Of a stretch of DNA of 64,000 nucleotides, positions 3,028 to 62,679 are shown in pieces. Every line of letters begins with the position of its first letter. The stretch's first letter is position 1. The notes under the pieces are model-generated. The model searched no databases, was not told where the DNA came from, and saw only the letters and a list, made by a program, of their open reading frames with translations. The stretch is from Aplysia californica (lineage: Eukaryota), in assembly GCF_000002075.1 (NCBI RefSeq), contig NW_004797416.1:624027-688026 (forward strand), read 5' to 3'. Position numbers and translations under genes: made by a program.

Positions 3028-3147
3028 CTCACAGCTCTTCTGCACCGACTCCCGGAATGCATCAATCTTCATCATGCTTTTTCCCATGCCGGGCCACTGA
3101 CAGCCCATGCCAGTAAACACAAACACGATGGGGCGACGAGTTGCAGC
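3028..3147 (-). CDS. Gene B exon 12, AT start ([18 protein letters not shown])
   Basis: 120 nt as in gene A. Confidence 0.93.
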
Positions 3148-4899
3148 CTGGATGTGTATGTGCATGGTATGGGGACAAAGAGAAATATATGACACTAAAT
3201 GAAAACCACGACAACCAAATCCTCTTTACTTTGCTTCAATAAAAGTAATGATCACAAAGTATCGTAATGCACATTGTGGAAGAATGATACTAATGATATT
3301 ATTAGTCATAGTGCCTGTACTACACACAAAACACAAAGGCTGAGTTCTTGAAGTTTAACAAGTGGGCAAAAAATATGCACCTCTCTCTCAAAACATGTTT
3401 TCAAAATTAAGGGAAACAAAACGATTGGATATTCCACTGCTGTCACACGTGCGGTACTATAATTGTGTCTTAATGAATGAATGGACACATAAGCAAAGAA
3501 GAAGGCCAGCATAAAATATATGTTTTCAGTGACAATGACACGTTTTGTTTTTACTCATTTAAGAAATCTTTTAGCCTTTAAGACTGATATAAATTTTGTG
3601 TTTACTCCAAAAGGCTAACAAAAAGACATTTAATTTTCATTGATAACCAGACCAGTACAGTCATAACTTTTGACAATTGCAAATTTGGATACATTACGAG
3701 ATATGTTTCACACACGAACGAACTAATTCTTGGATAATAGTGAATAAAGGAAAATCTTAAACTTAAAATTTTCAGGAGGGGGGGGGGGGGCATATTATAG
3801 TTGTATTTAATTGTTTACTTGGTCCCTGAGAAGAAGAGTGCACGCCGCCACAAGTCTACACTAGCCAGGAAGAATGGAGCCCCAAAATAAGGACAATCTT
3901 TCTAATTTATTGCCAGAGGTGCAAACTCAGATTAATAATGATAATAAAAATAACAATGGAGTGCATGTGTAAAGATTTAAAAGTCTCCACACAATACGAT
4001 CTGCACGCCAACAGCAGTTTTGTAATGCTGCTTTAGCTACCCATGACATTATGTCACCACCAAATTACCTTAATCTCTGTGACATTTTCAGGGGCGTTCA
4101 GGAGAGTAAATCCTCTATACAGCATCTTCTGAACTGGCTCATTGGCCGAGGACTGGAGCAAAGCTTGATAGTGGACATTGTCTGCATGTTTCTGCACCTC
4201 TGCACAAAGGAGGAGAGGCAAGAGACAACTATGTTAGTATGTACTGAAAGGCCCAACTGTGGTTTGTCCTGTTAGAAACTTTACTGAATAAACAGCTGGT
4301 CATAGTAATGTGGAAAGCTTTAAGCTATATCAAACAGAAGAGATGCATACATATGAGGTAGGAATCAACCTCTTCGTCTTTTGCTGAAAGCATTAAACTG
4401 AACACCCCGATTCCGATTGTTTTTGTTTTTCTTTTTCTACATTCCCTCAGTGAACCTCAGGGCAAAGCAAAACTTGTCTTTTCGCTCTGTTGTAGGTGTA
4501 GCTGTCATATCGGGGATGGACGTTAAATTCGCCCGTCTTTTAAACAACCTTACAGTGTTGAAAAGGGTGTGAACCTATGGCCTACAATGACCAATGTAGA
4601 GGTGAGAAAAACCACAGTGACACCAAGTTGCGAGTCCTGTTGCCAGTAATCGCAGGACAGCGTACGTTACTCTTATACCCACACCCTGGCGCAAAACGTG
4701 TTTCTACTTCAAGAGAATTGTTTAATTATATAAAGAATGAAGGTAAATCATGCCATTCGTATTTGAGAAAAAAATTGTTTAGAATGGCCTGCACATATTC
4801 AGCCTCAAAACGAGTCATACAAAGAATGAAACAAATGACATGAAATAAAACATAAATAGATAAATAGGATGAATAGATAATAAAACACAACAGAGGAGA

Positions 4900-4945
<46 letters not shown>

Positions 4946-7471
4946 GAGAGAGAGAGGGGGGAGAGAGGAGAGAGAGAGAGAGAGGCGTGGTGGGGGCAAA
5001 ACTCAAAATGCAGGGCTGTCCCTCACCATTGAAGATTTGCCTGAGACCATCCTCTGTGCGGGCACCGTATGTGAACAACCGGACAGCATTGCCTGAAGGA
5101 TGAATAGCGTTGTTGGGACGGTCATTTTTCCTGCAAAAGAAAATCAAAACATTTCACTTTATGTCAATGAGGAGTTTTCTTCTTTTTTCTTCACTTGCTT
5201 TAAAGCCCAGAAATCTGCTTACATGAGCCCACATGTTTGGGTTAGTGGGTGTGTCACTTACCTATGCACGTTGTTAGTGTTTTGGAGTGGAGGGGNNNNN
5301 NNNNNNNNNNNNNNNNNNNNNNNNNNNNNNNNNNNNNNNNNNNNNNNNNNNNNNNNNNNNNNNNNNNNNNNNNNNNNNNNNNNNNNNNNNNNNNNNNNNN
5401 NNNNNNNNNNNNNNNNNNNNNNNNNNNNCATTTAGTTGAGCACATTGTGAGAGTTGTGTTGGGTTTTGTCACTTAATTGAGCACATTGTGAGAGTTGGGA
5501 GGAAGGGGTCACTTATTTGAGCACACAAAGAGAAGGTCACCTTCAGAAGCACATAGTGGGAGTTGGGGTAGTTGGGTGTGTCATTGGATTGAGCGCACAG
5601 CGTGAGTTGAAAAAAAAGGGGTGGGGGGAGGGGGGTAGATCACATGCTTGAGCATACATTTTCAGTTGAAGTCGGTAAGATACTTACTTGAGAATAACGT
5701 GTGAGTTGGTCCCTCCAATGCCAAAGCCACTGATGCCACACACACGTCCAGTCCAGGGGGTCATTTCAGTGACCACTTTGAGGCGACCATCCAGCAGACC
5801 GGGAATTTCTCGGTTTGGTCTCTCAAAGTTCAAATTGGGAGGAATAACGCCTTCTTCCATGCCAAATACACATTTAACCAGTGCATTGAATCCTGAAAAA
5901 TCAAGAGAAAAGCCCTTAAAGTACTGACATGTCTCAAAAGGATAGCATCATCATCCAATAAAGATCACAAGACGTTTGAAAAATTACGGCGACTGAGACA
6001 AAAATACAACACTTGAATAAGCATGTTAGCTCTACATTCTACCAGCTTTTACAGTATTTACAAAGTGCACTGCCTTTCTCATTCGTTTTTCATACAACAT
6101 ACATGTTTGTCTTCTTTACAATCCTTTCACTTTTGTGAAAGTGTTGTATTAATGGAGTGTGGGTGGGTAATTTTTTTTACATTAATTTATGAATAGACAA
6201 AGTTCCCCTACTAGACAGGAAATAGTCAAATCATAGAGTAATTAATTTTCGTAATACTATGAAACAATTATCCCAGGAGAAATTGGTCGTTCTAAAATTG
6301 CCGGCTGTTATAAATTCGTGTAAGGTCCATGACTGCCACACTGCTACTAAAACAGCGATCTTCTTTTTCTCTATAAGAAATGAACCTGCTAAAAGGGGCG
6401 ACGTGTATATTTTAAAAAAACAATGAAATTAGTAAGATCATAGCGTGTAATCCATCTTTTTCGTCCTCGATTTCTAATAGTATCATTGCCCCATCCTCCC
6501 AGTCCGTATGTACGTACCAGCTGCTGCCTCGGCATGTCCCACGTTTGTTTTGATAGATCCCACCAAAAGTGGTGATTTCCTGCGTTTTCCACAGAACACA
6601 TTGGTGACCGCGTTGGCCTCAACAGTATCTCCGGCAGATGTGCCTGTTCCGTGGCATTCCACGTACTCCACCTGTGTAGACATTGCAGGGTAAGGACCAC
6701 ATTTCTGCACTGATGAATTATGGCAATAGCAACACTGACAACACAAAGACGAATCTGTCAGTATCAGGTTGACTGCTAACTGCTGGTAGGCATAAAGTGT
6801 AGATGACCCGTTACATGGGCAAGCCAGGGGATAAAACACATGCACATTTTAATGAGAGTGACTTTCCATACTGCAGAGAAGGTAAAAAAATGCAAAGTAA
6901 ACGTAGGATTCTACACATATCACCAAGCCAGTGAGAGTGATATACTGCATATGTCAACAAGTGATGGTATTGTTCTACATATCTCAACATGTGAAGGTGA
7001 CATTCTTCATATTTCACCAAGTGAGAGTGGTATTTTTCATATTTCACTAAGTGGAGGTGACATTCTACAAACTTCACCAAGTGAGAGTGACATTCTGCAT
7101 ACTTCACTAAATGATGGAGGTATTTGACATACTTCACGAAATGAGGGTGGCATTCTAGATACTCCTTTAGTTTTTTAAACGAATAGGTGAGGACAAAGGA
7201 GTGCAGCCACAGCATCCAATAAAAACATGAGATCAATTACAGACAGTAAAACAGTTTTAGATGCTTCACTGCGCGTCTAGTACAAGCCAAAATTTTTCTC
7301 AAACAGAGACTCGTAAAATCCACTTGAAAGAAATTAAGAAGATTGTCATGATTATTTATGACTGTCTCCCTCGAAGCTTCTTCTGTGCAGGTCCATCATT
7401 CAGCATTGGCACATGTCGCCATAACACCAACATCAACAGAACATGACTTCATGCCCGTTTGTTTTGGTGAG

Positions 7472-7532
<61 letters not shown>

Positions 7533-10500
7533 ACGTGTCTGAAACAATGTAAACCGTTTACTTGACTTCAAGAACAGATCACCGTGTCACTCACCACTTG
7601 GGGGTCAATCCCGCATTGCCTGTAGCACTCGTTGATGGTGTGCATCTGACCAATGACTGAGGGATGGTTGAAATCTGGAGGAAATATAAGATGGGCATAG
7701 TAACAGTTAAACACAAAAGGCTTTAAGCCGTTTTTCCACGGCGTGAATAATCAATATGTATAAACATTATGTGTCAAATACAAGCACATTTTCACTGAAT
7801 GGATTTAATCGCTTTTTTAAAAAAAAGGTATTTCAGTGAATGATAAAGACCTGCCGCGAACGCATAACGCAATTTTTTTTTAAAACTGGTCTAGAACTAC
7901 GCGCGAAGTACTCTGCGATCGATGCTTACTGTCTGCCCATATTCGACCTTGGCATCAGAAGATCCACAGGATCTGTCAGTCATCCTGAATCAATTCACAA
8001 TAGCCAATAAGAAGTCACGAATGGTTCGCAATGAACTGAGCTAACCAGTAGTCTGCAAATCAAGATCTGGAACAACTACAATTACTTACACTGTACAAGA
8101 GCCAATCAGATACCATGCAGACTACGCATTGCAGCTTATCAATATCAAACACATTACACACTGCAGCAAATCAGATGTTAAGAACACTACAAACTGCAGC
8201 CGTTTAGAACGGTGGTGATGGCAGAGCAATGTCTGTACTGATCGTCCCGTCTGTTTTGTAGTTGTGCTTCAATATAATTAACGAAAGCAGAAGAATTAGT
8301 TTGAGTACGCATATCGGCTCACCAAAGTCGCCGCTGTTTCCGTCACATGATTGGAAGCAGTGAGCAAGTTTGCAGTAGACTCTCCTCGCATCTTCCTCTT
8401 TTTGCAGCAGGACCGCACCCACCGCCTCACCACGACCAAATCCCTGAGCTGTGGAGAGACGGACAAACACCAATGCAAAAGACTAAAGGGCACTTTATGA
8501 TCAGCTGAACCAAACATTGGATGAGAGGTAAGAACAAGGTTGAGATGGATTCATTATTTTAGTCAACACTCATGTGAAAGAAAGAGAAAGAGAAAATGAG
8601 AGAGAGGGNNNNNNNNNNNNNNNNNNNNNNNNNNNNNNNNNNNNNNNNNNNNNNNNNNNNNNNNNNNNNNNNNNNNNNNNNNNNNNNNNNNNNNNNNNNN
8701 NNNNNNNNNNNNNNNNNNNNNNNNNNNNNNNNNNNNNNNNNNNNNNNNNNNNNNNNNNNNNNNNNNNCGTTGACTACAATTGTCAATTTTTCTTCTTCAT
8801 TCTCCTTCTAGATTTCACTGGAAGTCAGTTATCTGTGGGTCAAAAACAAACGGCAGCAACAAGGAAAGGACAACCCCCCCCCCCCCCAAGAAAGTAAAGG
8901 ATACCTACAAAAACTAGAGCAAGATTAATGATATGATACAATCGAACCTGCTCTAACAACCACCTGTCCAAGACAATCACCTGTTCAAATGACACCTTCC
9001 CACTTTTCCCTTGCGTTTCTATGTGATGATGACACCATTCAAGAGGACAATCTTTCTAAGATGACTACTTTTTTTCTCGACAATGGAAGGTCGTCTTACA
9101 CAGATTTGACTGTAATTACGACTAAAGCTGAATGTAGAGACCACTGACCTCTCTCATCGAAGGTGTAACACTTCGCGTCAGGACCAGCAGCGCCAAGCTC
9201 TATAAAGAGCAATGATGACATGGGGTTGCAGTGAAGCTGGCAACAGGCCACGATAGCGCTGTCGGCAACGCCCATGCGTATGTCCTTCATGGCCGTTTCC
9301 AGTGCAGCCAAGTACCCTGAACATGCTGTGTCTACACACACGCTAGGACCTGAGAAAAAACCGGTTTTTGACAGTTAGAAAATACAAGACTGGATCTCCA
9401 CCCCACCTTTGATCACAGCCCGTTAACTCTTTGGCAACGGGCATGTTGCTTGCTTGAAGACGCTCTGTTTTGGGTTTATTTTAAAATAGAAGCAAAACTT
9501 GATTAGTCATATTCAATTCCGTTTTCTTTATTTCAAAGTAAAAAAAGCAGGCTACATCTGCATACTATGAAATATGCAAACTTGTTGTTTTGATTAATGT
9601 ATGATGGTTTGAAATGTGCTGCAACATTGCTTTCGTCTGCAGATCGGAGATAATGCGTCCGCAGCGTCCCCCAAGAGCTACAACATATAGTCTGTCAGTT
9701 CGCTTTGATCAAGTTAATCAGATTCTATTAAAAGAATATTTTAAACATCTGTTAATACAGCATGCTCCAAAGTATATCAATTCATTTCTCCTATATCACG
9801 TTATTTTTTATACTTCTCCTGTTAACGCATGTATGTTATGCATTCTATTAATTTGAAGTAGTCCTCCCAATAGTTCTTTTAGTAACTTCCAAACAGCATG
9901 TCATAACAATTCACTTTCTCTAGCTCCGAAATAACAAAGCTTCTGAACCCACGGGAGAACGAACGGCTATAGAAATGTAACTTATTTTTATATAGTAGCA
10001 GTGAATACCTCTACTAAGCCTAGATTAATGAAAAAAAGCACTCTGATGATGAGACATAGATCTACCTCGAAGATCCATGGCGTAAGATATTCTGGAAGCT
10101 CTGAAGTTGTTGACCACGCCCATGCCCTTTTTAGCCTCACCGATGACCTCCAGTCCTTTGCTGAGCCAGTAACAGTTGGCGTCATAGGCCACACAGGGGA
10201 CATACACGCCCGTGTTGGTGCCTCGTATTTCCTGCATTGAGTAACCTGTAGGGGTGGAGGGGTGGGGAGCACAATCGGACAAATGAGCAGATGACTGATG
10301 CGCATCAAACAATCTCTATCTTTCTCTCTATCTCTCTCTTTATGGAAAGGTGGAACATGTTTGTTTGTAGCGTATCCCTGATGCAGGGTGAGAAAAGACA
10401 GTGATGATGATAAACAATAGGAGAATGGGTGGGGGGCAGCTCTAGTAGTCCTTTACTGTTATCTGACCTATAGACATAAACCAAGATTTAGAGAGTCCTT

Positions 10501-13332
10501 ACCAGCATCCACCACAGCCTCGTAGGCACCCTCCAATGATAAACGGATGTTGGGATCAAGGAACTCGGCATTCTTAGGGGCAATGCCAAAGTAGTCGTTG
10601 TCAAAATATTCTGCATCATCTATGTACGCGTGCTGCTTTTGTGTGCCATACTTTTCTGAGGAAGGAAATCAGAATATATGTAAAGGGCTAAAGGGAAAAA
10701 CCGAGGGATATCACTTTCTGGCATTTTTAAGAAAAACAAAAATGAAATGCGTCTACTCCAGTGGTATTGAGCTACTCGTCAGGTTTTAGCCGTAGACACT
10801 TAGATGAGCCTAAAGAGGTGCGTAAACATTTTCCAAATCACGTCACAACTCAAATTATTTTGTTCCCTTCGAGTACATGTACTGGTTCTTTGATCTATTA
10901 AGAAGCTAAACTCTTTACCCTGATGGCCAGTGTGTCGGCCCTGCCAGCGTCAGTCTGTAAGTTCAATGCCAGTGGAGTGACTAGTCTAACAGTTGAACCT
11001 ATTCTGAAGACAACGTATATAAAATAATCCTATGTTCGAACGGCCATTTCCCACTTCCCTCTTTTTGGGGGGGAAAAGTAAATAATAATAATAATAATAG
11101 ATAGCATTTGTATAGCGCATATCCCCGCTCAGCAGCAGGCTCTATGCGCTTTACACTATATTATTACCCCAGCAGACCATAGAACACTCCGAAACATTCT
11201 CAGCTTCCCGAGAAGCATACAGTGCAAGCAGCCGATTAAGCGCTCAAACACTAACAAACTGACAAGATCTTTCGCTGTCTATAGCCGGGTACCCATTCCC
11301 ACCTGGGTGAAGTGAGGAAAATTCGTGTAAAGTGCCTTTCCCAAGGACACAACGTTGGGCCCTTGACGGGATTCGAACCCACGACCTTACGGTTGCGAGT
11401 CCGAGAGCCTAACCACTAGGCCACCGACGCCACCGTAGACAAGAACCATCTTACAGACTAAAAGTACGAGGATTATAAAGTCTCGAATACGTTGAACTCG
11501 CATCCTTCCATAGCACGTGTTCCTACAACAGCAGAAAACAAGCTTCAAAGATCGTGGTCTCCGTAACAGGCCAAACATTATATCCACATCTTTTGTTGTC
11601 ATTTCGCTACCCCAGAGTTTCTGGCCGTTTTGATTCACTAAGACCATGAGATCAGAAACCAAAATATGCTCTATCTGCCCTATGAAAATCGTGGGATTAT
11701 TATGAGTCGTCATCAAGACATTCAAATAATTGTATTTGAAAAAACTTGATAAGCTGTGAGACTCAAAGTTTGTTATGTCAAATTTCTCAAATCGAGGTAC
11801 TGAGCAGATGGAACTTTGAAAATCTAAGGTAGCGATTTGCTGTCTTTCATGTTCAATCTCAACGACACACTCCTTTTTGGACAATGGTTCTTTGTTACAT
11901 ACTTTACTGAGGATCAACTTCGCAACTCACCGATGTCAAATCTCATGGGTTTTGTTGTGAAGACCTCCTGTTTGTTCCAGAGCGCGTGTTTCACGTCAGT
12001 CAGGGTCCTTGCTTGACCAACTCGGCCAGCCATGCCCGTAACGCAGATGTCACCTAGAGAACAAAATCAGACACAGTAAATAAAAACTGTAGACTTGTGA
12101 GTCGATTTCCACACAATAAGTCAAACGCATCGAATACGTGTAGTCTTTAAAGATTTTTAAATTCCATCTTCTTCTTTCTCCACCTGCTTGTAATCATTTA
12201 TCCGGCATCCTTTCGTCTGCCCCCACCCCCTTTCCCCGTTTGCTTTCTCCATCACTTCCTTACTAATCTCCTTCTCAAACCTCCTTCCCCTTTCCTTTCC
12301 AGTCTTTTTCCTTCCACCCTTCCTTTTTTTCTCCCCCATCCCTCCCGCACAAATGCATAGTTGTTCGCCTTCTAGCGTTTAAGGTTTACCCTTCCACCCT
12401 CGAGTCCCCCCACTCTCTCTCTCTCTCTTNNNNNNNNNNNNNNNNNNNNNNNNNNNNNNNNNNNNNNNNNNNNNNNNNNNNNNNNNNNNNNNNNNNNNNN
12501 NNNNNNNNNNNNNNNNNNNNNNNNNNNNNNNNNNNNNNNNNNNNNNNNNNNNNNNNNNNNNNNNNNNNNNNNNNNNNNNNNNNNNNNNNNNNNNNNNNNN
12601 NNNNNNNNNNNNNNNNNNNNNNNNNNNNNNNNNNNNNNNNNNNNNNNNNNNNNNNNNNNNNNNNNNNNNNNNNNNNNNNNNNNNNNNNNNNNNNNNNNNN
12701 NNNNNNNNNNNNNNNNNNNNNNNNNNNNNNNNNNNNNNNNNNNNNNNNNNNNNNNNNNNNNNNNNNNNNNNNNNNNNNNNNNNNNNNNNNNNNNNNNNNN
12801 NNNNNNNNNNNNNNNNNNNNNNNNNNNNNNNNNNNNNNNNNNNNNNNNNNNNNNNNNNNNNNNNNNNNNNNNNNNNNNNNNNNNNNNNNNNNNNNNNNNN
12901 NNNNNNNNNNNNNNNNNNNNNNNNNNNNNNNNNNNNNNNNNNNNNNNNNNNNNNNNNNNNNNNNNNNNNNNNNNNNNNNNNNNNNNNNNNNNNNNNNNNN
13001 NNNNNNNNNNNNNNNNNNNNACGAAGACACACTCAGGCTATCATTGTCTGTCTGAACGTTTGCTTTGTTCTTTGGTATTTAGAATTCCTTAGACACTCTC
13101 CCTATTTACAAGCTTTAACTCTTAGTCTCTTGGTCTATTTAAACGTTCGCCTAGGTATTTAGCATATCTTAGATACTCTCATCTCACCCACCCCCTTCCC
13201 TCCGGAAAATATCCCCAGCCTTTTTTAATGTTCACCTTGATATTTAGCATATTTGAGACACTCGGGCAGGTCCGAATTGGTGCCATTGATGGTCGGCGAC
13301 GTGTTGCTGTTTGAGTCAGCGTAGGCTGGCAT
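3028..13332 (-). CDS. Gene B: paralogous FAS-like polyketide synthase, 12 coding exons (KS + start of AT), 3'-partial
   Basis: ATG at 13332 with in-frame upstream TGA; 12 phase-consistent GT-AG exons, 1674 nt. Motifs DTACSG, HGTGT, KTNVGH, GMGCQW. Eight exons have the same length as their gene A counterparts. Confidence 0.92.
4069..4199 (-). CDS. Gene B exon 11, linker (YRGFTLLN)
   Basis: 131 nt as in gene A. Confidence 0.92.
5027..5130 (-). CDS. Gene B exon 10, KS-AT linker ([13 protein letters not shown])
   Basis: 104 nt as in gene A. Confidence 0.92.
5250..5710. repeat. Degenerate tandem copies of the gene B exon 9 donor region
   Basis: Repeated tcacttaNttgagcaca...gagttgg. Confidence 0.75.
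5688..5892 (-). CDS. Gene B exon 9, KS end ([15 protein letters not shown])
   Basis: 205 nt as in gene A. Confidence 0.94.
6518..6671 (-). CDS. Gene B exon 8, KS His residues (VECHGTGT...KTNVGHAE)
   Basis: Catalytic motifs; 154 nt as in gene A. Confidence 0.95.
6905..7170. repeat. ~30 bp minisatellite (~8-9 units) resembling the start of gene B exon 8
   Basis: Unit gtgagagtgacattctgcatacttcaccaa. Confidence 0.8.
7595..7674 (-). CDS. Gene B exon 7, KS ([10 protein letters not shown]...GIDPQV)
   Basis: 80 nt as in gene A. Confidence 0.92.
8323..8448 (-). CDS. Gene B exon 6, KS ([11 protein letters not shown])
   Basis: 126 nt as in gene A. Confidence 0.93.
9149..9349 (-). CDS. Gene B exon 5, KS catalytic Cys ([12 protein letters not shown])
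   Basis: Active-site motif; 201 nt as in gene A. Confidence 0.95.
10066..10245 (-). CDS. Gene B exon 4, KS (RGTNTGVYV...[11 protein letters not shown])
   Basis: KS motif; GT-AG. Confidence 0.92.
10503..10655 (-). CDS. Gene B exon 3, KS ([22 protein letters not shown]...DAG)
   Basis: FD..FGI...DP..R motif; GT-AG. Confidence 0.92.
11080..11434 (-). mobile_element. tRNA-derived SINE, family 1, full length
   Basis: A box TGGCCTAGTGG, B box GGTTCGAATCCC, core CCCAGGTGGGAATGGGTACC, (TTA)n tail; near-identical copy at 40553-40915. Confidence 0.9.
11931..12053 (-). CDS. Gene B exon 2, KS start ([13 protein letters not shown]...)
   Basis: tag|GT...G|gtgagt; KS N-terminal motif. Confidence 0.9.
13236..13332 (-). 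CDS. Gene B exon 1 (N-terminal extension [11 protein letters not shown]...KYAKYQ)
   Basis: Polypyrimidine/cag acceptor near 13362, ATG, donor G|gtgaac whose phase fits exon 2. Confidence 0.7.
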
Positions 13333-13459: not shown

Positions 13460-13503
<44 letters not shown>

Positions 13504-13742: not shown

Positions 13743-13792
<50 letters not shown>

Positions 13793-50870: not shown

Positions 50871-50954
<84 letters not shown>

Positions 50955-52926: not shown

Positions 52927-52986
<60 letters not shown>

Positions 52987-53986
52987 GTCTCTCTCTCTCC
53001 GATCAAATGTACGAGAGTCAATGTCCATAAATCCGTCTTTCAATCTTTACATTGGACACATCTACAATGTCGATGGAGGCGTAAAAAACATCTACTTTAA
53101 ATTATATTTCATTTTTACACCTACAACTCACCTCACAGTTTTTCTGCACAGACTCGCGGAACAGAGGGATCTTCATCATGGTCTTGCCCATGCCAGTCCA
53201 CTGACAACCCATGCCTGTACATGCAAACACTATGGGGCGGCGGCTGGCAGTCTAGGAGTTTTCATATGTGTGTGGAGAAGAGACAAGTAGAGAATCGTGA
53301 AAGCAATACAACAAAACAATATTTGTAAGTGCTGGAAATCAGTTTGCGTTAGGAACTTCTGATGCTGTTAACCTGTTTGGTTTGTTTTAGTAAGCGTTTG
53401 ACAGCATTTGCAATACAATTTGGTTATAAATAATAAATGCGAGCCGAAGATTTTACTATTTAAAAAAATGAATATGAAAGTTGACACACATTGAGCTGGA
53501 AGGTCAGATCTAACTGATGACAGGCCAAGGAACAATCATCATGATGAAGGCCATAGCTGACCACAAAGCGTTTGCACTGTCTAATAATGCCAGCGCCTGA
53601 ATGCAGGAAACATGCAGTCAAGTAAAATATTGACATAAGTGACTGCTGACCTCTTGTGACTTTTATATCAAATGAAACATGTCCATAGCATATTAGAACA
53701 TAATGTCATAAACTGATAAGACCATAGATGAAACGTAATAGGAACCCTTCTTCGGGCACCCTCGTTCATTGGTCACTCTATAGGTTCAACTTTTCAATAC
53801 TGTAAGGTTATTTAAATGACAGGACCTCCGAACGTACCATCCATCTCTGATAGAACAGAGCCAAATACAATGTAGGTGGAGAGTTTTAAAGAAATATAAA
53901 TTTAGTCTAGAACGTTGGCCACCCCCCCCCCCCTATAGTCCAGGATGATACCACATGAGCTAACGGTGTGCCCTGGGGTACTCGTG

Positions 53987-54077: not shown

Positions 54078-57000
54078 TGGTTCCATATCACTGCTACAAG
54101 TCTACATGAGCCAGAAAGAATAGAGCCTCAAAATAGGGACTTCTTTCATGATAATTTATTGTCAGAGGTGAAAACTCAGATTAATAACGATAACAATAGT
54201 AGCAATGGCCTGCATTTGTAAAGATTTAAAGGTTTCCACAAGCTACGATCTGCACATCAATAGCAGTTTCGTAATGGTGCTATGGCTTTACATTACTGTA
54301 TGACTCTATCCAGTTACTTGTACCAAAGATAGTAAATAACAAGATGGGCCACTCAGTCAAAAAAGTGTCCGCAGGAAGTATGCTCTTTGCTTCAGATGGC
54401 GCTGCAGTCTGTTTTGAAGCTCTCTTTCGTTTTTCCAGAAGAAGAATAGGAATAGCACCTCCTTGCGTGCGCAGATCGACTGCTGTTCATCAGCAGTTCG
54501 GGTTCGTTCAGTGCGGAGTTTTAGGTTATTTATATTTTAATGACCTCTCGCCTTTCATTCTAAAGTCAAATTGAACGAAGAAAACAATCACCCTTTCCTC
54601 CAGAAGAGGTTTTTTGTCAGCGTAACCATTTTAAAAAAGCGTTCTTCCGAAATTCATTTAAAAACTTGCTAGTTTCACTTTGATTTTTTAAAACTCAAGT
54701 AGGATAACTCTGTTCGCAAAAGGTGCGCTTTTGCGAAGAGGGCGCCACCGAATTTTGAGGACACTTTTTTAATTGGCTCAAAGAGAGAAGTGGCCCCTCT
54801 TGTTATGTAAACTCATTGCTTGTACCTTAATCTCAGTAAGGTTCTGAGAAGCGTTCAGGACGGTGAATCCACGGTATGGCATCTTCTGAACTGGCTCGTT
54901 GGCTGAGGACTGGAGCAGAGCCTGAAAGTTCACGTTGTTCCCGTTCTTCTGCACCTCTGCTCGGGGGGAGAGACAAGATATTATTATTATTATCATTATT
55001 TTTATTATCGTTATTGTTATAATCATGATTATTATTGATATCATTATTATNNNNNNNNNNNNNNNNNNNNNNNNNNNNNNNNNNNNNNNNNNNNNNNNNN
55101 NNNNNNNNNNNNNNNNNNNNNNNNNNNNNNNNNNNNNNNNNNNNNNNNNNNNNNNNNNNNNNNNNNNNNNNNNNNNNNNNNNNNNNNNNNNNNNNNNNNN
55201 NNNNNNNNNNNNNNNNNNNNNNNNNNNNNNNNNNNNNNNNNNNNNNNTGGTTGGCGGATGCTCTGGTGTGGTTTGCTCCTTCTTTCCTATCAAACATCTC
55301 TCGTCTTTATCTCCCCTCCTTCTTTTTTGTGTTTGTTACTCTCTTGTAACACATCTAATCTTCGGCACTTATATGACCTTTTTGTGTTGCAAGTGCCGTA
55401 AAACTCTGACGAAAACTTAAATATTATTATCAACATTATTATCAGTATTATTTTTAAATAGTATTATTATAAATATCAACATCATCATTATCATCATCAT
55501 TATCATTATCATTACTATTAGTTCTATTATTATTAAAGTATTCCTCAAAGAGGTGTTTACTAATTAATTTTTTTTAAAGATAGACTCCTTGTGTTTGTGG
55601 GAGCGCTCACAAATCAAGGTAAGCAAGAAAGGCCATCCAGACAATTACAATTCCAAATCATTCTTAAAAACAGTGAACCTGTTCATTGTCCAGATATAAC
55701 TGCATTCTAATCTGATGCATTTCTTCTTCTCTTACAATGGCCATGTTTCTGAGTCATCATAGTATATCTAATGTATTGATAAGTGTGTCATCGTTGGTGC
55801 AGTGCTCTAGAAAATGACAGCTAACATTTTGTTGATGTTAAGTTTAACAGTATATCGCCTTTTGCCTTTCCCCGTTGTATAAGGAAAATGGGAAGATTAT
55901 GGAGGGGGTACCAGTAGATATGCCCATNNNNNNNNNNNNNNNNNNNNNNNNNNNNNNNNNNNNNNNNNNNNNNNNNNNNNNNNNNNNNNNNNNNNNNNNN
56001 NNNNNNNNNNNNNNNNNNNNNNNNNNNNNNNNNNNNNNNNNNNNNNNNNNNNNNNNNNNNNNNNNNNNNNNNNNNNNNNNNNNNNNNNNNNNNNNNNNNN
56101 NNNNNNNNNNNNNNNNNNNNNNNNNNNNNNNNNNNNNNNNNNNNNNNNNNNNNNNNNNNNNNNNNNNNNNNNNNNNNNNNNNNNTGAGTGAGTGTGTGTG
56201 TTTATACATGTATGTATGCGTACCCGAGAGCATAAGAGGAGGCATATGAACATAAAGGGATCGACTGACAACAGACGTGAGGATGAACTCTCAGACATGC
56301 AATATTGAGGAGCAATTAATGGGAATTAATTTTCTAAAAGGAGAAAATGGGGATATACAAGTTATTAGCGTAAGTTTAAAAATAAAAACAGGCTAAGTCA
56401 ATTTTCAGAATAAAAACGAGGGTAGTAGCCATTTGAACAAACTATGTAATTCACAAACTGTATATTGCACGGCTAAATCAAGTTAAGAACTAGCCAAACT
56501 CAGTCATTAAAATGTGAAAATTGGTTAATGGGGGGGGGGGGGCAATGCCCTAAAAGTCCCGATTCGGCTCAAAATTATGGATTTAGATTTGTTTGCATTT
56601 TTAGCTTCTTTAGCCTCTCTTACAACTATTTCATAGCAATAGACTCCCCTAAAGCCTTATTTCTTCCCATACCTGGCATATTTGTCACCACCATTTCTGC
56701 ATAAAGTCAATCTTTTATTTTTCTTTAACGCCCGTTTTCTCAACGAAGTTTTTTCTATGTACATTTTTTATTAAAGAACTTCACTATTTTTCATCCAATC
56801 TTCATGAAATTTTCACAAAATGAAGAGGAGATGTAGATCTAATACTAAAAAGTATACGTTGAAATTTTGATAGATGGAATAGATTTTTGTTGGTGGTGTC
56901 TTGAGTGTGGATTTTCACGGATTTTTTGCAACTTGAATAGTACCTCAGGAAAAAATTCATTTATAATATTCTAATCCGTTTAGGAAAAATTCAAGTGAAA

Positions 57001-59393
57001 AATATTTTAATCTAGTTTGCCAACATGCATGCAAAAAAAAAAATCTATTTCCATGAAAAATAAGTGCGGTATTTGTTTCGTAAGACATGTCAATGAAATT
57101 CAATATGGCCGCCGTAGCCTTGGAAACGAAACTCTTTTCCTCAAATTTGATTGCAGATTTCAAGACTCTTTACTATGCTTGTTATATGTGTGAAATTTGG
57201 GAAAATTTCATCTACTAATAAGCGAGATAGCGTTCAGGTGTAGCCACCCCCCCCCCCCCTTTTAAGACGTGGCAGAACAAATGTGACTGAGCCTGTTCTT
57301 CTGTTGAACCCTTCAATTACATTGACAGGTGGCCAAGAAAGCAGGTGATATGCATGCAGGTGGTCATGGCATGATTAAGAGGGTCAATAGGAAGGCAGGC
57401 AAACTGTCATACTGGAAAGAGAAGTGTATTTCTCACCATTAAAGATCTGCCTCAGGCCATCCTCTGTACGTGCACCATACGTAAAAAGACGGACTGCGTC
57501 ATTAGAAGGGTGTACCGTGGTGTTTGGACGATCATTCTTCCTGCAAAACCCCACAAAAATGATATAGTACTTTTATTATTAAGTATTTCCATTTTCGAGT
57601 TTAAATACAGTCGAATTTGCTCTAATTACCAGCCGTCCAAGACAATCACCTGTACAAAGAAACATTTCCCACTTTCCCCTTACATTTTAAGCGTATTCTC
57701 ACTGTCCAAGAGGATCACCTGTTTAAGATGACCACTTTTTATCGACAAAGGGCAGCCGTCTTGGATAGGTTCGACTGTTTTGCATTTGACGGCCAAGCTG
57801 AGACCAAGATAAATAGCTTTGAAACAATTGAAGGCTCTCTGCTACCTCCCATCACACCTTGATTAATAGTTCATGACCCAGAAGTAACATACTGTCCCTT
57901 AATGGGGGGGCCCTTAAACTTAAACCAATCGTGACTAGCAAATTATACCCAAAAACAGAAACTATGATCACTTCAGCCGCAAGAACAATCTATAATCATA
58001 TCGACTGAGAGACAACAGAAACCTCCTTACTTGATCACACGGTACTGATAGTGGGGTGAGAAGGACATTTCACTTGAGTTCACATTTTGAGTTGGGGGAT
58101 GGGTTATTCACTTGAGTTCACAGTTCGAGTGAGGTGGATGGGTCACTTACTTGAGCACACAGTGCGAGTTGGTTCCTCCGATGCCAAAGCCACTGATGCC
58201 ACACACTTGTCCAGACCAGGGGGTCATTTCAGTGACCACTTTGAGACGGCCGTCCAGAAGACCGGGAATCTCGGGGTTGGGTCTCTCAAAGTTCAAGTTT
58301 GCAGGCAGGAGACCTTCCTCAATGCCGAAAATACACTTGACCACAGCGTTGAAGCCTGAGATCCAAACGTAAAAAGCATGAAAATAAACAATTAATGAAC
58401 TGTAATGCATAAGCTCCGTTTAAAGAATATAAACATCATACAGAGAAACCTCATACAAAGAAAGAAAAGAACTACCACGATGAGTTTAGGCTGTAAAAGG
58501 ATAAAAGGATGGGAAGGGGGGAGAGTAAGAAGAGTAAGATTTAAATTATAATGGTTGACAGGCCTGTAGCTCCAACCAGGGTAAAATCTGCACTTAGTTA
58601 AGTCACTTTAACGTAATATAGATATAAATGATCAACTTCAGTCGATATATCTATACTGGACGCAACCTCTACCAAAATTTCCATATTTAGAAGAAAGTAT
58701 ATCCCATTTGAGTCGCTACACATTTTGTAAAAACCATGTTATTCTGAAAAAGTATGTTGAGCAATAAAAGCGTTCGCCCCAAGCACACGAAGTATTTTTC
58801 CACTCGTTGCACGGCTGCGGGTATGCAAACGAAGCAATTTTTGCCTGTTCGTCTCTCATCACCGCCAAGGGGCGTCAAATTTCAAAGCCATACGAGGAGT
58901 CGAAATTTCCAAGTCTTCCCTGGGCTTTTTTTTTTTGGTATGACTATTGTGTTCGTTGAATCAAGAAGCAAAAAAAAGTCCTGTAAGGCAGCACTATCAC
59001 AAGTACGAACATGCACACATGATTAATCATTTCTGATATTTATGATAGTGACTTTTTGTAGCACAGGACCAAGCAACAGATACTGACCACCGGCATAATA
59101 TGTTGTGTAGCGGTTAGGCGATTCGCTGTCGCACCGTTTTCTAAATGATATGAATTGTGTCGATTGGAGCGTAAAAACACCTACAAATAGGTACTGACCA
59201 GCAGTGGCCTCAGCGTGTCCGATATTTGTTTTAACAGACCCCACCATGAGCGGCTTGGTTCTGCGTTTGCCACAAAACACATTGGTGATGGCGTTGGTCT
59301 CCACAATGTCACCTGCCCGAGTACCTGTGCCGTGACACTCCACGTACTCCACCTGAGGGACACATCAAAGACATGTTGCTACCTTAGAATTAC

Positions 59394-59461
<68 letters not shown>

Positions 59462-61469
59462 CATTTTTTTGCCGTTTTGGGTTACTTAGACCACAAGATC
59501 ATAAACCAAATGTTCTTCCAGCTCTGTCACAATCGAAAGATTATTAGGGTCACCATCAAGATACTCAAAGAAATAATTTCGAAAAAGCTTGACGCGTTGT
59601 GAAACGCAATATCTTTAATGTCAAATGATTCAAAACAAAGTACTGAGCAGATGGAACTTTGCAATTCTAAGGTAGCGATGTGAGAGGGACAGCAGCATAC
59701 TGTCGGTAACCTTGAACAAAAACATATTATCGTACTTGTAAAACTTACTACAATAAGGGAGTCGATTATTAGTATGTGTACTCGCAATTTTAGAAGTTTT
59801 ACTTCTCAATCTTATGTGAAATGTGTTAATCTGGTTCCATCTGTAAAGGCGCACTTTCAAACATTAAACTTGTGTCGTAGATCACAAGGTAACAAGACCA
59901 TGATAATGGGGTAGAAATATACTTAGTAACATTAGAAATCTGTGTTGGCTTGTGTGCTAGCGTACGGGTAGAGACGACGGACAAGACCATGGCATTCAGG
60001 TAGGACCACCTCCTGTGATATCAAAAGTATGTGGATGTGCATGTGGATGTATTTTTGGAAAGGGCACACAATATCTGTGTGATCAAGCGCGGTTGATATG
60101 ATTGCATGCTTTACTATAGTACCACCCTGCCTTGGTACATAATATCTCCTCGCAGAATTAACATTTTCAGCTCATACATCTGCCATTTCTGCAAATGAAG
60201 TATTAAATACGCGTACAGTCTAAAACAAACACAGGAGTTCACGCCCGGCGCGCAGAATTCAACACTGTCACTTACTGTGTGGGGATCAATTCCACACCGC
60301 TTGTAGCACTCAGTGATTGTTTGCATCTGGCCAAAGATGGAAGGGTGGTTGAAATCTGGAGAAGGAAAAAAACCCAAAATATTTATTTTGGCAAACATAA
60401 CCGTGGAGAAAATGTATAAACGTTTTCATACCTATCGAACGGGGTAATTAGAGGATGGTGTTGTGTGGGTTTGCTCCTTATTTCCTATCAAACATCTATT
60501 GTCCTATCCATCATCTACGGGCATCCACTCCGTAATCCAGCATGATATCAACTGGGCTAACGATAGGCCCATTAGATAGCGCTAAAAGAACTAGCTCTGA
60601 CAAATAATTAAGAGTGAAATCGTTCTCTTAAAACCCTCAGCACCATTAGACCTACCGCTACTGCATTTAACTACATTTTGCCGTAAGTTGGGGATCAAAG
60701 GTGAGCCAATATAATAGTACCCAAAAATTCTTGTACTTCCCAGTACTTTTAACATCATAAATCCTCCATCCTCTCCAACATAGTCACCGTTATTTCATCT
60801 CTGTTGGAATAAAACTAGTTTTTATTCTTTTTAATGGCAATATGGAACAGATAATAACTAATTATGCCCACCAAAGTCGCCGCTGTTCCCGTCGCAAGAC
60901 TGGTAACAGTGAGCCAATTTGCAGTATATTCTCCTTGCATCTTCCTCCTTTTGGAGCAAGATGGCACCCACTGCCTCACCACGACCAAATCCCTGAGCTG
61001 TGGACATGTNNNNNNNNNNNNNNNNNNNNNNNNNNNNNNNNNNNNNNNNNNNNNNNNNNNNNNNNNNNNNNNNNNNNNNNNNNNNNNNNNNNNNNNNNNN
61101 NNNNNNNNNNNNNNNNNNNNNNNNNNNNNNNNNNNNNNNNNNNNNNNNNNNNNNNNNNNNNNNNNNNNNNNNNNNNNNNNNNNNNNNNNNNNNGAGAGAG
61201 TGTATAAACATGTAACAGATCACAAAAATGCTTGAAAGATTGAAGCAGTCTGACAAAAATGATGTTATACCAAAAATCTACAAATGAGGAGGTAAAACAA
61301 ATTTCTTTACTTAACGTGGGTCAATTAACCAGTTTGAGGATGATGGTGTTAATTTCATTCTTAGGCCCTTATATCAAAGCTATACTGAAAGACGATTATA
61401 CCGATGAAACCATTCACAACTTCTGAAAAGCGCATTTTTTAAAGTGACCTGAAAAAATCAGTTGAACTC

Positions 61470-61524
<55 letters not shown>

Positions 61525-62679
61525 GACTTGTGGTTCTCTTCTTCTGTTGCTGTCCTATTGAAGCAGACAGGCATAATTAAGTTGCCTCATTAGTGAAGAG
61601 ACAGGGTAGAATAATGATATAAGAAAATCATTCGAGACTAGTAATAGCATCAGAGCAAGCAATGTTCCCTCATCCACCTTCCCCAATCCTAAGATCCAAA
61701 GATTATCGTGGCAAAAAAAAAACATTTTAAAAAATCAACAGCTTAAGAGAACACAAGGGAAAAACCAGATATGTCCTAAATTAGAACATTCATCTGCAAC
61801 AATAAAACGCCTAAAAATTACAACAGGCAAACGGTGAGAGTGAAAAGGCCGCTATCAGTTAGTTGTAAGTGTAAGAATATGGGTTTAACCATCTCCTTTT
61901 TGGGGGTCTTGGTAAGCCTTTTACGGCGCTCGAAACTGCAAGGTCATATGAACGTTCGGAGAACATTATACATTTTCAGTTTAATAAGAAATAATTTTGA
62001 ATTTTTGCCCGGATGGTGGCCGAAGCCTACTCTTATCGATTTTAGGACCACCAAGGAATCTTTAATGTTCTCAACTAGCACACAGAACCTCCGAGATATT
62101 TTGCCCTTATCCGAGAAGGCTAGGTATTATATCTTACCTACCCTAAGATCGGGGGTGTGGCTGAAAGACAGCAGTAAGAATTAGCCCAAGAGTAGAAGTT
62201 GAAAGGCTGCAGAAAGAGTCAGGCGCTCAGAGGAGGTGATAAAAAAAGGAGGGGGGGGGGGCAGAAAGTGGAAACGAAAGAGGACGACAGAACATGGTTA
62301 GTGAGCAGGAAAGAAGGTGAAAGGAGAAAGCTTCAGAAAATGCTCTGTCACTCTCAGATTTCGAACCCGGAACCTATTGAATGAGAGGCGAACATCGTAA
62401 CCTCTAGACGACGAGAGCCCCTCCGTCAATCTCTGATGGCACCGCTGTTTACCGTGAGACAAAGCAAAAACTACTTACCTCTCTCATCAAAGGTGTAGCA
62501 CTTCGCATCTGGACCAGCTGCGCCAAGCTCCATAAACAGCAGAGACGACATGGGGTTGCAGTGCAGTTGGCAACCAGCCACAATAGCGCTGTCGATAATG
62601 CCCAAGCGCATGTCCTTCATAGCAGCCTCTATGGCAGCCAGATATCCGGAGCAAGCTGTATCTACACAGACACTGGGAC
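24305..62679 (-). CDS. Gene A: FAS-like iterative type I polyketide synthase (KS-AT-DH-pseudoMT-ER0-KR-ACP, no TE), 40 exons visible, 5'-partial
   Basis: Hand-spliced join of 40 GT-AG exons (listed separately) with matching phases, 6347 nt, no internal stop. Motifs: DTACS, HGTGT, KTNIGH, GHSLG, AFHS, GHQLNGVKLFP, FLDCFLQ, GGLGGFG, QTNY, LGLDSL. Exons equivalent to gene B exons 1-4 would lie beyond 64000. Confidence 0.93.
24973..25137 (-). CDS. Gene A exon, ACP (LGLDSLMGVE)
   Basis: Phosphopantetheine Ser motif; donor G|gtgaga. Confidence 0.95.
25618..25803 (-). CDS. Gene A exon, KR end / ACP start (QKIDSCL..MDTFL)
   Basis: FAS-like Q...SCL..D.FL. Confidence 0.92.
26502..26720 (+). mobile_element. 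tRNA-derived SINE, truncated, with terminal inverted segment
   Basis: B box GGGTTCGAGTCTC, core CCCAGCAGTAATGGGTACC. Confidence 0.75.
27164..27262 (-). CDS. Gene A exon, KR (AIQWGAVGDVG)
   Basis: KR motif. Confidence 0.94.
28091..28337 (-). CDS. Gene A exon, KR catalytic residues (VLHD, SK, FSS, QTNYGFGN)
   Basis: KR motifs. Confidence 0.95.
28741..28912 (-). CDS. Gene A exon, KR (GYQ...GPVGGIF)
   Basis: KR motifs. Confidence 0.94.
29562..29743 (-). CDS. Gene A exon, KR NADPH loop (YILCGGLGGFGLEL)
   Basis: Intact Rossmann motif. Confidence 0.95.
29880..30075. repeat. ~32 bp degenerate minisatellite
   Basis: Repeated cttaaaacactcaaaa.ctcattg units. Confidence 0.65.
30554..30774 (-). CDS. 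Gene A exon, ER end (GVIKP...GKVVIE)
   Basis: ER motif. Confidence 0.92.
31239..31367 (-). CDS. Gene A exon, ER (GVDVVLS...VEMGR)
   Basis: ER motif. Confidence 0.92.
31985..32159 (-). CDS. Gene A exon, ER (AAI..ALS.G..VFTTV)
   Basis: ER motif. Confidence 0.93.
33296..33481 (-). CDS. Gene A exon, ER (AASVP...LIHSGATAMGT)
   Basis: ER motif with degenerate nucleotide-binding loop. Confidence 0.93.
33948..34063 (-). CDS. Gene A exon, ER (GYEFVG...RVIGL)
   Basis: ER motif. Confidence 0.92.
34982..35176 (-). CDS. Gene A exon, ER start (GDPSSARW...VYYSALNDRD)
   Basis: ER motifs. Confidence 0.92.
35496..35679 (-). CDS. Gene A exon, pseudo-KR (CLRKEPGG...NVFRDGRWG)
   Basis: Strong FAS motifs. 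Confidence 0.94.
36281..36463. mobile_element. TA-flanked MITE family with CAGTCGAA termini (copies ~8937-9113, 24765-24935, 41783-41949, 57606-57778)
   Basis: tacagtcgaa...ttcgactgta-like terminal inverted repeats and internal CACCTGTCCAAGAC repeats shared among five copies. Confidence 0.7.
36746..37010 (-). CDS. Gene A exon, pseudo-KR (WL...RLWLV...SGIFGFV)
   Basis: FAS pseudo-KR motifs. Confidence 0.92.
37254..37432 (-). CDS. Gene A exon, pseudo-MT (PGGFILVQE)
   Basis: MT-fold motif. Confidence 0.92.
37936..38119 (-). CDS. Gene A exon, pseudo-MT (YTATD...WDP...NVLH)
   Basis: FAS pseudo-MT motifs. Confidence 0.9.
38510..38681 (-). CDS. Gene A exon, pseudo-MT (DRLL...VLEVDAASS)
   Basis: Degenerate SAM motif I. 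Confidence 0.88.
39133..39283 (-). CDS. Gene A exon, pseudo-MT N-part (SGLAKTL)
   Basis: GT-AG, phase fit. Confidence 0.8.
40360..40504 (-). CDS. Gene A exon (FVPY...QYATDC)
   Basis: Completes the FAS-like LE...FVPY motif. Confidence 0.85.
40553..40915 (-). mobile_element. tRNA-derived SINE, family 1, full length
   Basis: About 11 differences over ~333 bp from the 11.1 kb copy (hand count). Confidence 0.9.
42130..42325 (-). CDS. Gene A exon, DH end/linker (...PLLEEIR)
   Basis: Open frame; acceptor chosen by phase fit, so the 5' boundary is less certain and N gaps lie upstream. Confidence 0.7.
43264..43434 (-). CDS. Gene A exon, DH catalytic Asp (WIAFLDCFLQ)
   Basis: DxxxQ motif. Confidence 0.92.
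44184..44310 (-). CDS. Gene A exon, DH (EIYLTLLHRGLDYAGPFRGI)
   Basis: Y..L..RG.DY...F.GI motif. Confidence 0.92.
44742..44960 (+). mobile_element. tRNA-derived SINE, family 2 (other copies ~49372-49560, 50468-50650, 51712-51935; reverse partial tandem 20745-20900)
   Basis: B box GAGTTCGATTCCC; shared body TATCCCTCTCAG and tail GGCGTAAAAYACCTACATTTAAA. Confidence 0.7.
45152..45297 (-). CDS. Gene A exon, DH (GEFEVTENNELVANGKI)
   Basis: FAS-like FEV.E...LV..G; aag acceptor. Confidence 0.88.
46609..46756 (-). CDS. Gene A exon, DH (LNGVKLFPGTGYL)
   Basis: Completes HxxxGxxxxP. Confidence 0.94.
47412..47514 (-). CDS. Gene A exon, DH start with catalytic His (YIFGHQ)
   Basis: GT-AG, phase fit. 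Confidence 0.9.
47655..48003. repeat. Five degenerate tandem copies of a gene A exon donor region
   Basis: Repeated tacctgaacacctccatgtgactccactgt. Confidence 0.85.
47977..48105 (-). CDS. Gene A exon, post-AT linker (FPVPPKTPLISPL..WSH)
   Basis: FAS-like TPLISP...W.H. Confidence 0.92.
48598..48749 (-). CDS. Gene A exon, AT end (EIAPHGLLQ)
   Basis: FAS EIAPH motif. Confidence 0.93.
49580..49729 (-). CDS. Gene A exon, AT (RSPKWLSS...NGVNF)
   Basis: FAS-like RS..W.SS motif. Confidence 0.9.
50193..50422 (-). CDS. Gene A exon, AT (ACHNAEDSVTVSG...TAFHS)
   Basis: AT motifs. Confidence 0.95.
50874..50956. repeat. (TA)n microsatellite
   Basis: Direct observation. Confidence 0.95.
50973..51162 (-). 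CDS. Gene A exon, AT catalytic Ser (GHSLGEVAAGYADG)
   Basis: Active-site motif. Confidence 0.95.
51958..52065 (-). CDS. Gene A exon, AT (ILKRNHNVDL...IPVIQ)
   Basis: GT-AG, phase 0-0. Confidence 0.88.
53132..53251 (-). CDS. Gene A exon, AT start (RPIVFACTGMGCQW)
   Basis: AT motif. Confidence 0.93.
53989..54070. repeat. (CA)n microsatellite
   Basis: Direct observation. Confidence 0.95.
54345..54780. mobile_element. MITE-like element with imperfect TIRs
   Basis: cagtcaaaaaagtgtccgca ... tgaggacactttttttaattg; absent from the equivalent gene B intron position. Confidence 0.55.
54826..54956 (-). CDS. Gene A exon, linker (MPYRGFTVLN)
   Basis: GT-AG, paralog match. Confidence 0.92.
56525..57265. 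mobile_element. TTAA-flanked non-autonomous DNA transposon-like element
   Basis: ttaa+G-run at the left end, C-run+ttaa at the right end; no ORF. Confidence 0.4.
57437..57540 (-). CDS. Gene A exon, KS-AT linker
   Basis: [13 protein letters not shown]; paralog match. Confidence 0.92.
58151..58355 (-). CDS. Gene A exon, KS end ([12 protein letters not shown])
   Basis: GT-AG, paralog match. Confidence 0.94.
59199..59352 (-). CDS. Gene A exon, KS His residues (HGTGT, KTNIGH)
   Basis: Catalytic motifs. Confidence 0.95.
60276..60355 (-). CDS. Gene A exon, KS (DFNHPSIFGQ)
   Basis: GT-AG, paralog match. Confidence 0.92.
60872..60997 (-). CDS. Gene A exon, KS ([11 protein letters not shown])
   Basis: GT-AG, paralog match. 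Confidence 0.93.
62479..62679 (-). CDS. Gene A exon, KS catalytic Cys ([12 protein letters not shown])
   Basis: Active-site motif; tag|GT...G|gtaagt. Confidence 0.95.

What the first reader, a model, noticed from the sequence alone, without database searches (positions are those of the whole stretch)
3028..62679. Tandem cluster of animal FAS-like PKSs; the complete copy is ER-dead and TE-less, suggesting a polyene/pyrone pathway
Seen: two head-to-tail minus-strand megasynthase genes. The nearly complete one (gene A) is KS-AT-DH-pseudoMT-ER-KR-ACP with intact KS/AT/DH/KR/ACP catalytic motifs, a destroyed ER cofactor loop and no TE. Known: canonical animal FASN has an active ER and a C-terminal TE. 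Animal FAS-like PKSs such as Elysia EcPKS1/EcPKS2 make polyene-pyrone polypropionates, and the parrot PKS MuPKS makes polyene pigments. Inference: this locus is a duplicated secondary-metabolite (defence or pigment) pathway that automated pipelines would probably label simply 'fatty acid synthase'.
Basis: partly seen in the sequence, partly recalled or inferred. Interest (0 to 1): 0.92.

Follow-up and report, generated by a model that had tools for sequence, protein, structure and literature searches.

The report
Tandem sea-hare FAS-like polyketide synthases
Two intact, duplicated sea-hare genes derived from fatty acid synthase most likely make unsaturated (polyene-type) small molecules instead of fat; both are already catalogued in a published mollusc enzyme clade, but no product of that clade has been reported.

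Summary
Observation confirmed and extended. The genome is Aplysia californica (scaffold 146). Gene A has 44 coding exons, all introns GT-AG, and a stop-free 2281-aa frame: KS-AT-DH-pseudoMT-ER-KR-ACP, ending 7 residues after the ACP with no thioesterase. Gene B is also full-length. It runs 32 kb past the window's left edge, is 83% identical to A, and four of its exons map to assembly gaps. The gaps the program named lie in B introns or the spacer, and the flanking exon phases fit. Both KS domains are already in Lin et al. 2024 (PMC10764717); B's is labelled AFPK mo-clade 3, a TE-less clade reported from sea hares, bubble shells and pteropods. Canonical FAS, with its TE, lies on scaffold 76. 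The ER lacks the FAS glycine loop, catalytic Lys and Asp. It is not decaying: dN/dS is 0.20, and the same altered loop occurs in a sea-angel clade-3 protein (split ≥133 My). Best reading: iterative polyene synthases with a structural, inactive ER. Extender, release route and product are unknown; pyrone is only an analogy to clade 1. I found no published account of the tandem layout, the 17 extra introns or the mosaic paralog divergence.

The parts
58151..62679 (-). Gene A ketosynthase, exons 5-9 (62679-62479, 60997-60872, 60355-60276, 59352-59199, 58355-58151); catalytic Cys codon 62653-62651. Exons 1-4 lie beyond the right edge (window-equivalent 69156-64859)
   Evidence: the KS matches published RNA-derived SRR830638_NODE_12029 (one difference seen in the ~180 aa shown, compared by eye)
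54826..57540 (-). Gene A KS-AT linker, exons 10-11 (57540-57437, 54956-54826)
48598..53251 (-). Gene A acyltransferase, exons 12-17; active Ser621 codon 51102-51100; Ala-Phe-His motif
42130..48105 (-). Gene A post-AT linker and dehydratase, exons 18-24; His917 and Asp1073 present
35496..40504 (-). Gene A pseudo-methyltransferase and structural pseudo-KR, exons 25-31. Most of this region is one 1389-nt exon in the scaffold-76 FAS
30554..35176 (-). Gene A enoylreductase (ER0), exons 32-37; altered nucleotide loop at 33325-33296; FAS Lys1771 and Asp1797 equivalents are Arg and Val; dN/dS against gene B 0.20
25618..29743 (-). Gene A ketoreductase and KR-ACP linker, exons 38-42; glycine loop, Lys, Ser and Tyr intact
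24973..25137 (-). Gene A single ACP core, exon 43; Ser2240 codon 25078-25076
24305..24327 (-). Gene A terminal coding exon: 7 residues then stop; conserved in gene B; no thioesterase follows
13333..24304 (.). Spacer between gene A stop and gene B start (3' UTR of A, 5' region of B); holds four assembly gaps; no TE-like coding found
5688..13332 (-). Gene B exons 1-9: start codon at 13332, then the ketosynthase (12053-11931, 10655-10503, 10245-10066, 9349-9149, 8448-8323, 7674-7595, 6671-6518, 5892-5688)
   Evidence: the KS matches published SRR830638_NODE_435, labelled clade3 (no difference seen, compared by eye)
3028..5130 (-). Gene B exons 10-12 (linker and AT start). The gene continues past the left edge to window-equivalent -32142. 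Exons 13-14 are not visible; gaps at 2280-2920 and just left of the window lie where they are expected
54093..54287 (.). Conserved non-coding element in gene A intron 11, 82% identical to gene B intron 11 (3847-4038); no other copy found in the genome

Best explanation
Two intact tandem paralogs of the mollusc AFPK mo-clade 3, derived from an animal FAS gene. Shown here: the gene structure, intact KS/AT/DH/KR/ACP motifs, a single ACP, no TE, the ER substitutions, clade identity and a separate FAS. Inferred mechanism: each protein works as a homodimeric iterative synthase. The AT loads an extender; malonyl-CoA is slightly favoured by the Ala-Phe-His motif, but such motifs fail to predict substrate in AFPKs. 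The KS condenses and sets chain length. KR and DH make a double bond each cycle. The ER cannot use NADPH and is kept as a structural dimer domain, so a conjugated polyene builds up. Without a TE, release is by spontaneous cyclisation after skipped KR steps (pyrone, as in EcPKS1/2), by hydrolysis and decarboxylation to a methyl ketone, or by a partner acting in trans. A and B differ most at silent sites in KS-AT, so they probably make related chains that differ in starter or length. The product is a specialised metabolite made in a restricted tissue; defence, signal and pigment roles cannot be told apart.
For: Gene models and motifs. Published clade label and matching KS sequences. Clades 1-3 lack a TE and clade 3 is restricted to Euopisthobranchia, including Aplysia. 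ER: glycine loop altered, Lys1771 to Arg and Asp1797 to Val (64, 69), and the Gly-Ser-x-Glu-Lys stretch made acidic. EcPKS2, whose ER is described as non-functional and which makes polyenes, has a comparably altered loop, HAGASVVG (46, 15, 54). Canonical FAS with intact loop and TE on scaffold 76. A small KS tree puts A+B (100/100) apart from the two FAS-type genes (99/97). 26 of 28 FAS introns up to the ACP are shared with gene A (63).
Against: No clade-3 enzyme assay was found in the searchable literature. ER inactivity is inferred from sequence alone, and the altered loop is identical in a sea-angel protein (25), which could indicate retained binding or a new role. I found no report of a de novo polyene or polypropionate from A. 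californica (44, 53; not exhaustive). Two polyA runs of unknown tissue showed no exon coverage or exon joints over the pseudoMT-ER stretch (36).
Confidence: 0.72

Rival explanations
1. The remodelled ER is still active, selectively or with another cofactor, so the enzymes make partly saturated chains (haminol-like or branched lipids) rather than full polyenes.
For: ER dN/dS equals KR dN/dS (0.20). The altered loop is identical in gene A and a Spongiobranchaea clade-3 protein, lineages split at least 133 My ago. antiSMASH scores that ER at 175.7 bits. Arg at the Lys1771 position is a conservative change.
Against: Both central glycines are replaced, the Asp is lost and acidic residues sit at the presumed 2'-phosphate site (64). 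Gene B has a different loop variant. The Elysia ER0 domains are also ordered and canonical in fold yet unused (15), so conservation is explained structurally.
Confidence: 0.13
2. They are polypropionate-pyrone synthases working like EcPKS1/EcPKS2 (methylmalonyl extender, pyrone release).
For: Same domain order and size: 2281 aa against 2272 and 2287 aa. Both have ER0 and no TE. Cephalaspideans, a pteropod and Dolabella contain polypropionates (53).
Against: Different clade (3, not 1). The KS active-site region and pocket are strongly remodelled. The AT has Ala-Phe-His where EcPKS2 has Ser-Tyr-His (46, 50, 63). No such compound from this species was found in my searches.
Confidence: 0.3
3. Ordinary FASN paralogs for housekeeping lipids.
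For: Same domain order and shared introns with FAS; 39% overall identity to the scaffold-76 FAS (45, 63).
Against: Canonical FAS and a second FAS-type gene lie on scaffold 76. There is no TE and the ER is altered. The published FAS-HMM score of gene B's KS is 438.6, against about 755 for an FAS-labelled contig from the same run. Long separate branch in the KS tree.
Confidence: 0.03
4. The second copy is an assembly artefact (haplotype duplicate) or a pseudogene.
For: Gappy assembly; four exons of B are not visible (42).
Against: 83% protein identity, KS dS about 1.07 and largely unalignable introns. No stop in 40 visible exons. Each paralog has its own RNA-derived KS contig in one run.
Confidence: 0.05

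Closest known systems
AFPK mo-clade 3 (Lin et al. 2024, PMC10764717), e.g. SRR830638_NODE_435 and NODE_12029, and Spongiobranchaea australis SRR10527249_NODE_231
   Same: The KS domains match the two SRR830638 entries. Domain order, absence of TE, the altered ER loop, the KS active-site context and the N-terminal leader match the sea-angel full-length reference.
   Different: One ACP instead of tandem ACPs, and shorter AT-DH and KR-ACP linkers than the sea-angel protein. I found no description of the tandem genomic layout or the 44-exon structure; no locus labelled clade 3 is in the paper's genomic dataset.
Elysia chlorotica EcPKS1 / EcPKS2 (AFPK mo-clade 1)
   Same: KS-AT-DH-MT0-ER0-KR-ACP, no TE, about 2280 aa; best PDB hits for a KS exon.
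   Different: Different clade, restricted to sacoglossans; a different ER loop lesion; proven methylmalonyl use and pyrone release, both untested here.
Animal cytosolic FAS (Aplysia XP_005094185.1, scaffold 76)
   Same: Domain order, 39% identity, 26 of 28 intron positions up to the ACP.
   Different: FAS has an intact ER loop, Lys, Asp and a C-terminal TE. Gene A has 17 introns that FAS lacks.
Budgerigar MuPKS and other canonical animal PKSs
   Same: Polyene output from an iterative enzyme; ER inactivity in MuPKS is from my own knowledge.
   Different: A separate PKS clade. This genome's own PKS is on scaffold 228 and does not group with A/B.

Membership tests
AFPK mo-clade 3 | KS falls in mo-clade 3 of the mollusc KS tree / HMM scheme | tested here: met
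   Gene B's KS matches a sequence the authors label clade3 (FAS HMM 438.6, PKS HMM 253.4). Gene A's KS is in their FAS-like set and is 84.5% identical to B's. Compared by eye on tool output; I did not rerun their HMMs or tree.
AFPK mo-clade 3 | No thioesterase | tested here: met
   Stop 7 aa after the ACP in both paralogs; no TE hit nearby
AFPK mo-clade 3 | Host is a euopisthobranch gastropod | tested here: met
   Published Aplysia scaffold-76 FAS exon coordinates give the matching stop-free protein in G000:C76
AFPK mo-clade 3 | KR predicted active (unlike mo-clade 2) | tested here: met
   Glycine loop, Lys, Ser and Tyr present in A; the Tyr-bearing exon of B is not visible and maps to a gap
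AFPK mo-clade 3 | Tandem ACPs (some members only) | tested here: not met
   Single ACP in A and B; the paper calls this optional
AFPK mo-clade 1 (EcPKS type) | KS in the sacoglossan clade 1 | tested here: not met
   Published label is clade 3; host is not a sacoglossan
AFPK mo-clade 1 (EcPKS type) | Methylmalonyl-CoA extender and pyrone products | not testable with these tools
   AT motifs do not predict substrate in AFPKs
Canonical animal FASN | Active ER (glycine loop, Lys1771, Asp1797) | tested here: not met
Canonical animal FASN | C-terminal thioesterase | tested here: not met
Canonical animal FASN | KS groups with FAS orthologs | tested here: not met
   Small tree of partial KS: A+B form a long separate branch and the two scaffold-76 genes group together; order among FAS, A/B and C75 is unresolved

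The most novel reading that the evidence does not exclude
Clade-3 AFPKs are the still unidentified synthases of euopisthobranch de novo polyenes, such as navenone/lignarenone-type aryl polyene ketones or related signals. Aplysia californica would then make an unrecognised polyene with this pair. The remodelled ER, conserved for at least 133 My, would have a new non-reductive job such as chain release or programming.
Probability: 0.15. Interest if true: 0.7.

Novelty: already known. Interest (0 to 1): 0.36.

Why it matters
I found no assay of a mo-clade 3 enzyme, and the release mechanism of most TE-less AFPKs is stated to be unknown. A complete gene A model in a laboratory model animal makes the question directly testable by yeast expression, as done for EcPKS1/2. 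If the product is a polyene, it would show de novo chemistry in a sea hare usually thought to rely on dietary compounds (own knowledge). It could also point to the enzymes behind the cephalaspidean alarm pheromones. The existence and family of the genes are not news.

Tried and rejected
1) The search of protein representatives with the KS active-site exon returned only multi-module bacterial-type PKSs; these served for rough mapping only. 2) search for homologous proteins with an ER exon found nothing; this is uninformative because of the length window. 3) RNA reads on 33270-38700: two polyA runs and two contig sets gave no exon coverage or exon joints, only repeat-derived or low-depth DNA-like pieces. 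Tissue is unknown, so this is not evidence of silence. 4) A hidden TE in the spacer gaps is unlikely: a conserved stop follows the ACP in both paralogs, and the FAS TE region needs several exons. 5) Further clade-3 copies in the genome: none found with two KS exons (lower bound). 6) Tailoring genes in about 28 kb and 35 kb of flank: only a temptin-like gene and transposon-like remnants were seen, so there is no sign of a biosynthetic cluster (short exons could be missed). 7) First splice models had wrong donors at exons 17 and 31; corrected. 8) The species and tissue of the SRR runs could not be found in papers. Published sequences were not typed into scripts, so they are missing from my tree.
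Full report
Source. The window is G000:C146:624027-688026 of a 927-Mb assembly in 4332 contigs. Lin et al. 2024 (PMC10764717) list the exon coordinates of the Aplysia californica FAS on scaffold 76. Applied to G000:C76, they give a stop-free 2566-aa protein with the published N-terminus. The PKS on C228 also matches their Aplysia scaffold-228 entry. The genome is therefore AplCal3.0.

Observation. Minus-strand frames show FAS-like exons across the window. I fetched 60 kb to the left and 40 kb to the right and compared the two copies. I then set splice sites. Gene A has 44 coding exons from window-equivalent 69156 to 24305, 2281 aa, no internal stop, and 43 GT-AG introns. Gene B starts at 13332 and ends at -32142. 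Forty of its exons are visible, nearly all the same length as in A, with GT-AG ends. Exons 13, 14, 31 and 40 are not found, and each expected position contains a large assembly gap. They were kept as X runs of A's length; with that assumption the frame is open. A and B are 82.7% identical, and A is 39% identical to FAS.

Gaps. The gaps at 5296-5428, 8609-8767 and 12430-13020 are inside B introns 9, 5 and 1, and exon phases on both sides agree with gene A. A published RNA-derived KS runs across introns 2-9 of B in frame. The gaps at 15410, 20343 and 20978 are in the spacer. In gene A the gap 61010-61193 ends 12 nt before the exon 6 acceptor; all other gaps in A lie inside introns. No gap was filled. 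The joined model was used only inside local scripts; database searches were made exon by exon by reference, and the joined search and fold were left out.

Domains. Pfam supports KS, AT, DH, ER, KR and ACP exon by exon. The catalytic residues of KS, AT, DH, KR and ACP are present in A. In B the AT serine and KR tyrosine exons are hidden. The methyltransferase region has Asp in place of the first Gly of the SAM loop, consistent with a pseudo-domain. After the ACP a short exon, conserved in both genes, ends the protein. The FAS TE finds no counterpart in the 164 kb held, and the only PF00975 hit in the genome is on scaffold 76.

The ER. Against human and Aplysia FAS (HSGSGGVGQ) the loop reads HSGATAMGT in A and HSGASATGT in B. 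The proposed proton donors Lys1771 and Asp1797 align with Arg and Val, and the Gly-Ser-x-Glu-Lys stretch is acidic. EcPKS2, whose ER is described as non-functional and which makes polyenes, has a similarly altered loop. Inactivity is thus likely but inferred. The domain is not eroding: it is full-length, dN/dS between paralogs is 0.20, the same as KR, and A's loop is identical in a clade-3 protein of the sea angel Spongiobranchaea australis. That lineage split from sea hares at least 133 My ago. The simplest account is one ancient loss of activity with retention as a structural dimer domain, as seen in the EcPKS structures. A residual or new function cannot be excluded.

Identity. Lin et al. 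define mollusc AFPK clades 1-4. Clades 1-3 lack a TE, and clade 3 occurs only in cephalaspideans, sea hares including Aplysia, and pteropods. Their alignment holds SRR830638_NODE_435, whose KS matches gene B with no difference seen and is labelled clade3. It also holds SRR830638_NODE_12029, which matches gene A with one difference in the part shown. Both come from one assembled sequencing run, at coverage about 3, and read in frame across introns, so both genes are transcribed and spliced at least in the KS. These comparisons were made by eye on tool output. My own small tree of partial KS sequences from this genome and bacterial-type KSs joins A and B (100/100) on a long branch. The two scaffold-76 FAS-type genes form a separate group (99/97), and deeper order is unresolved. 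Only these two clade-3 copies were found in the genome.

What I did not find published. (i) The tandem arrangement and full gene models. (ii) Gene A shares 26 of 28 FAS introns up to the ACP but has 17 that FAS lacks. Seven of these lie in the region that is one 1389-nt exon in FAS, whereas the paper notes large exons there. (iii) Divergence between A and B is a mosaic. At fourfold-degenerate sites it is 0.47 in KS-AT and 0.46 near the ACP, but 0.10-0.13 in DH, late pseudoMT and KR (chi-square p about 1e-16). This suggests gene conversion in the modifying region while the condensing region diverged; it was not tested with outgroups.

Mechanism. Shown: architecture and residues. From family knowledge: AFPKs are iterative homodimers; the KS sets chain length; KR plus DH without ER give polyenes; EcPKS1/2 release without a TE, possibly by spontaneous pyrone formation after unreduced final cycles. 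Inferred: A and B make conjugated polyenes (about 0.7). The extender is uncertain. The AT carries Ala-Phe-His where EcPKS2 has Ser-Tyr-His, which by bacterial rules favours malonyl, but those rules failed in EcPKS2 mutants. Candidate product types in relatives are de novo aryl- and pyridyl-polyenes of cephalaspideans and polypropionates such as pteroenone. EcPKS2 accepts benzoyl and nicotinoyl starters, so such chemistry is within reach of AFPKs. I found no such compound reported from A. californica. My RNA test over the pseudoMT-ER region was negative in runs of unknown tissue, which fits restricted or low expression but does not show it.

Verdict. The finding is real and the family call is correct, but these genes are already catalogued members of AFPK mo-clade 3. 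The interest lies in the untested chemistry of that clade.

Noticed in passing
L026:381-602 and L019:6939-7100 (minus strand, about 12-15 kb upstream of the gene A start): Two-exon temptin-like secreted protein gene (Pfam Temptin_C, E 5e-10 and 2e-17), same strand as the PKS pair; no second copy in the DNA held.
   Followed up: partly
window 54093-54287 and 3847-4038: About 195-nt element in intron 11, 82% identical between the paralogs although neighbouring silent sites are near saturation; no other genomic copy found. Possible shared regulatory element.
   Followed up: partly
G000:C76 about 87000-123100, minus strand (L033-L036): A second FAS-type gene converging on the canonical FAS. Some exons are 94-98% identical to it and others about 50%, suggesting mosaic gene conversion; its ER loop and C-terminus were not examined.
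   Followed up: partly
L005 (G000:C75 about 1022500-1029600): Another FAS-like KS gene whose motifs resemble the published mo-clade 2 reference; L007 (C90) matches a published FAS-like entry. Neither was modelled.
   Followed up: no
window 45134-45324 and gene B counterpart: DH exon 21 and its upstream intron edge are 96% identical between paralogs, the clearest candidate conversion tract.
   Followed up: partly
window 47650-48003: Tandem repeat in intron 18 built from copies of the end of exon 18; a similar array is present in gene B.
   Followed up: no
window 58151-58200 and 5688-5740: The KS C-terminal loop has Ile where FAS has Phe; the same change is in the sea-angel clade-3 reference, so it is not specific to this locus.
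   Followed up: partly
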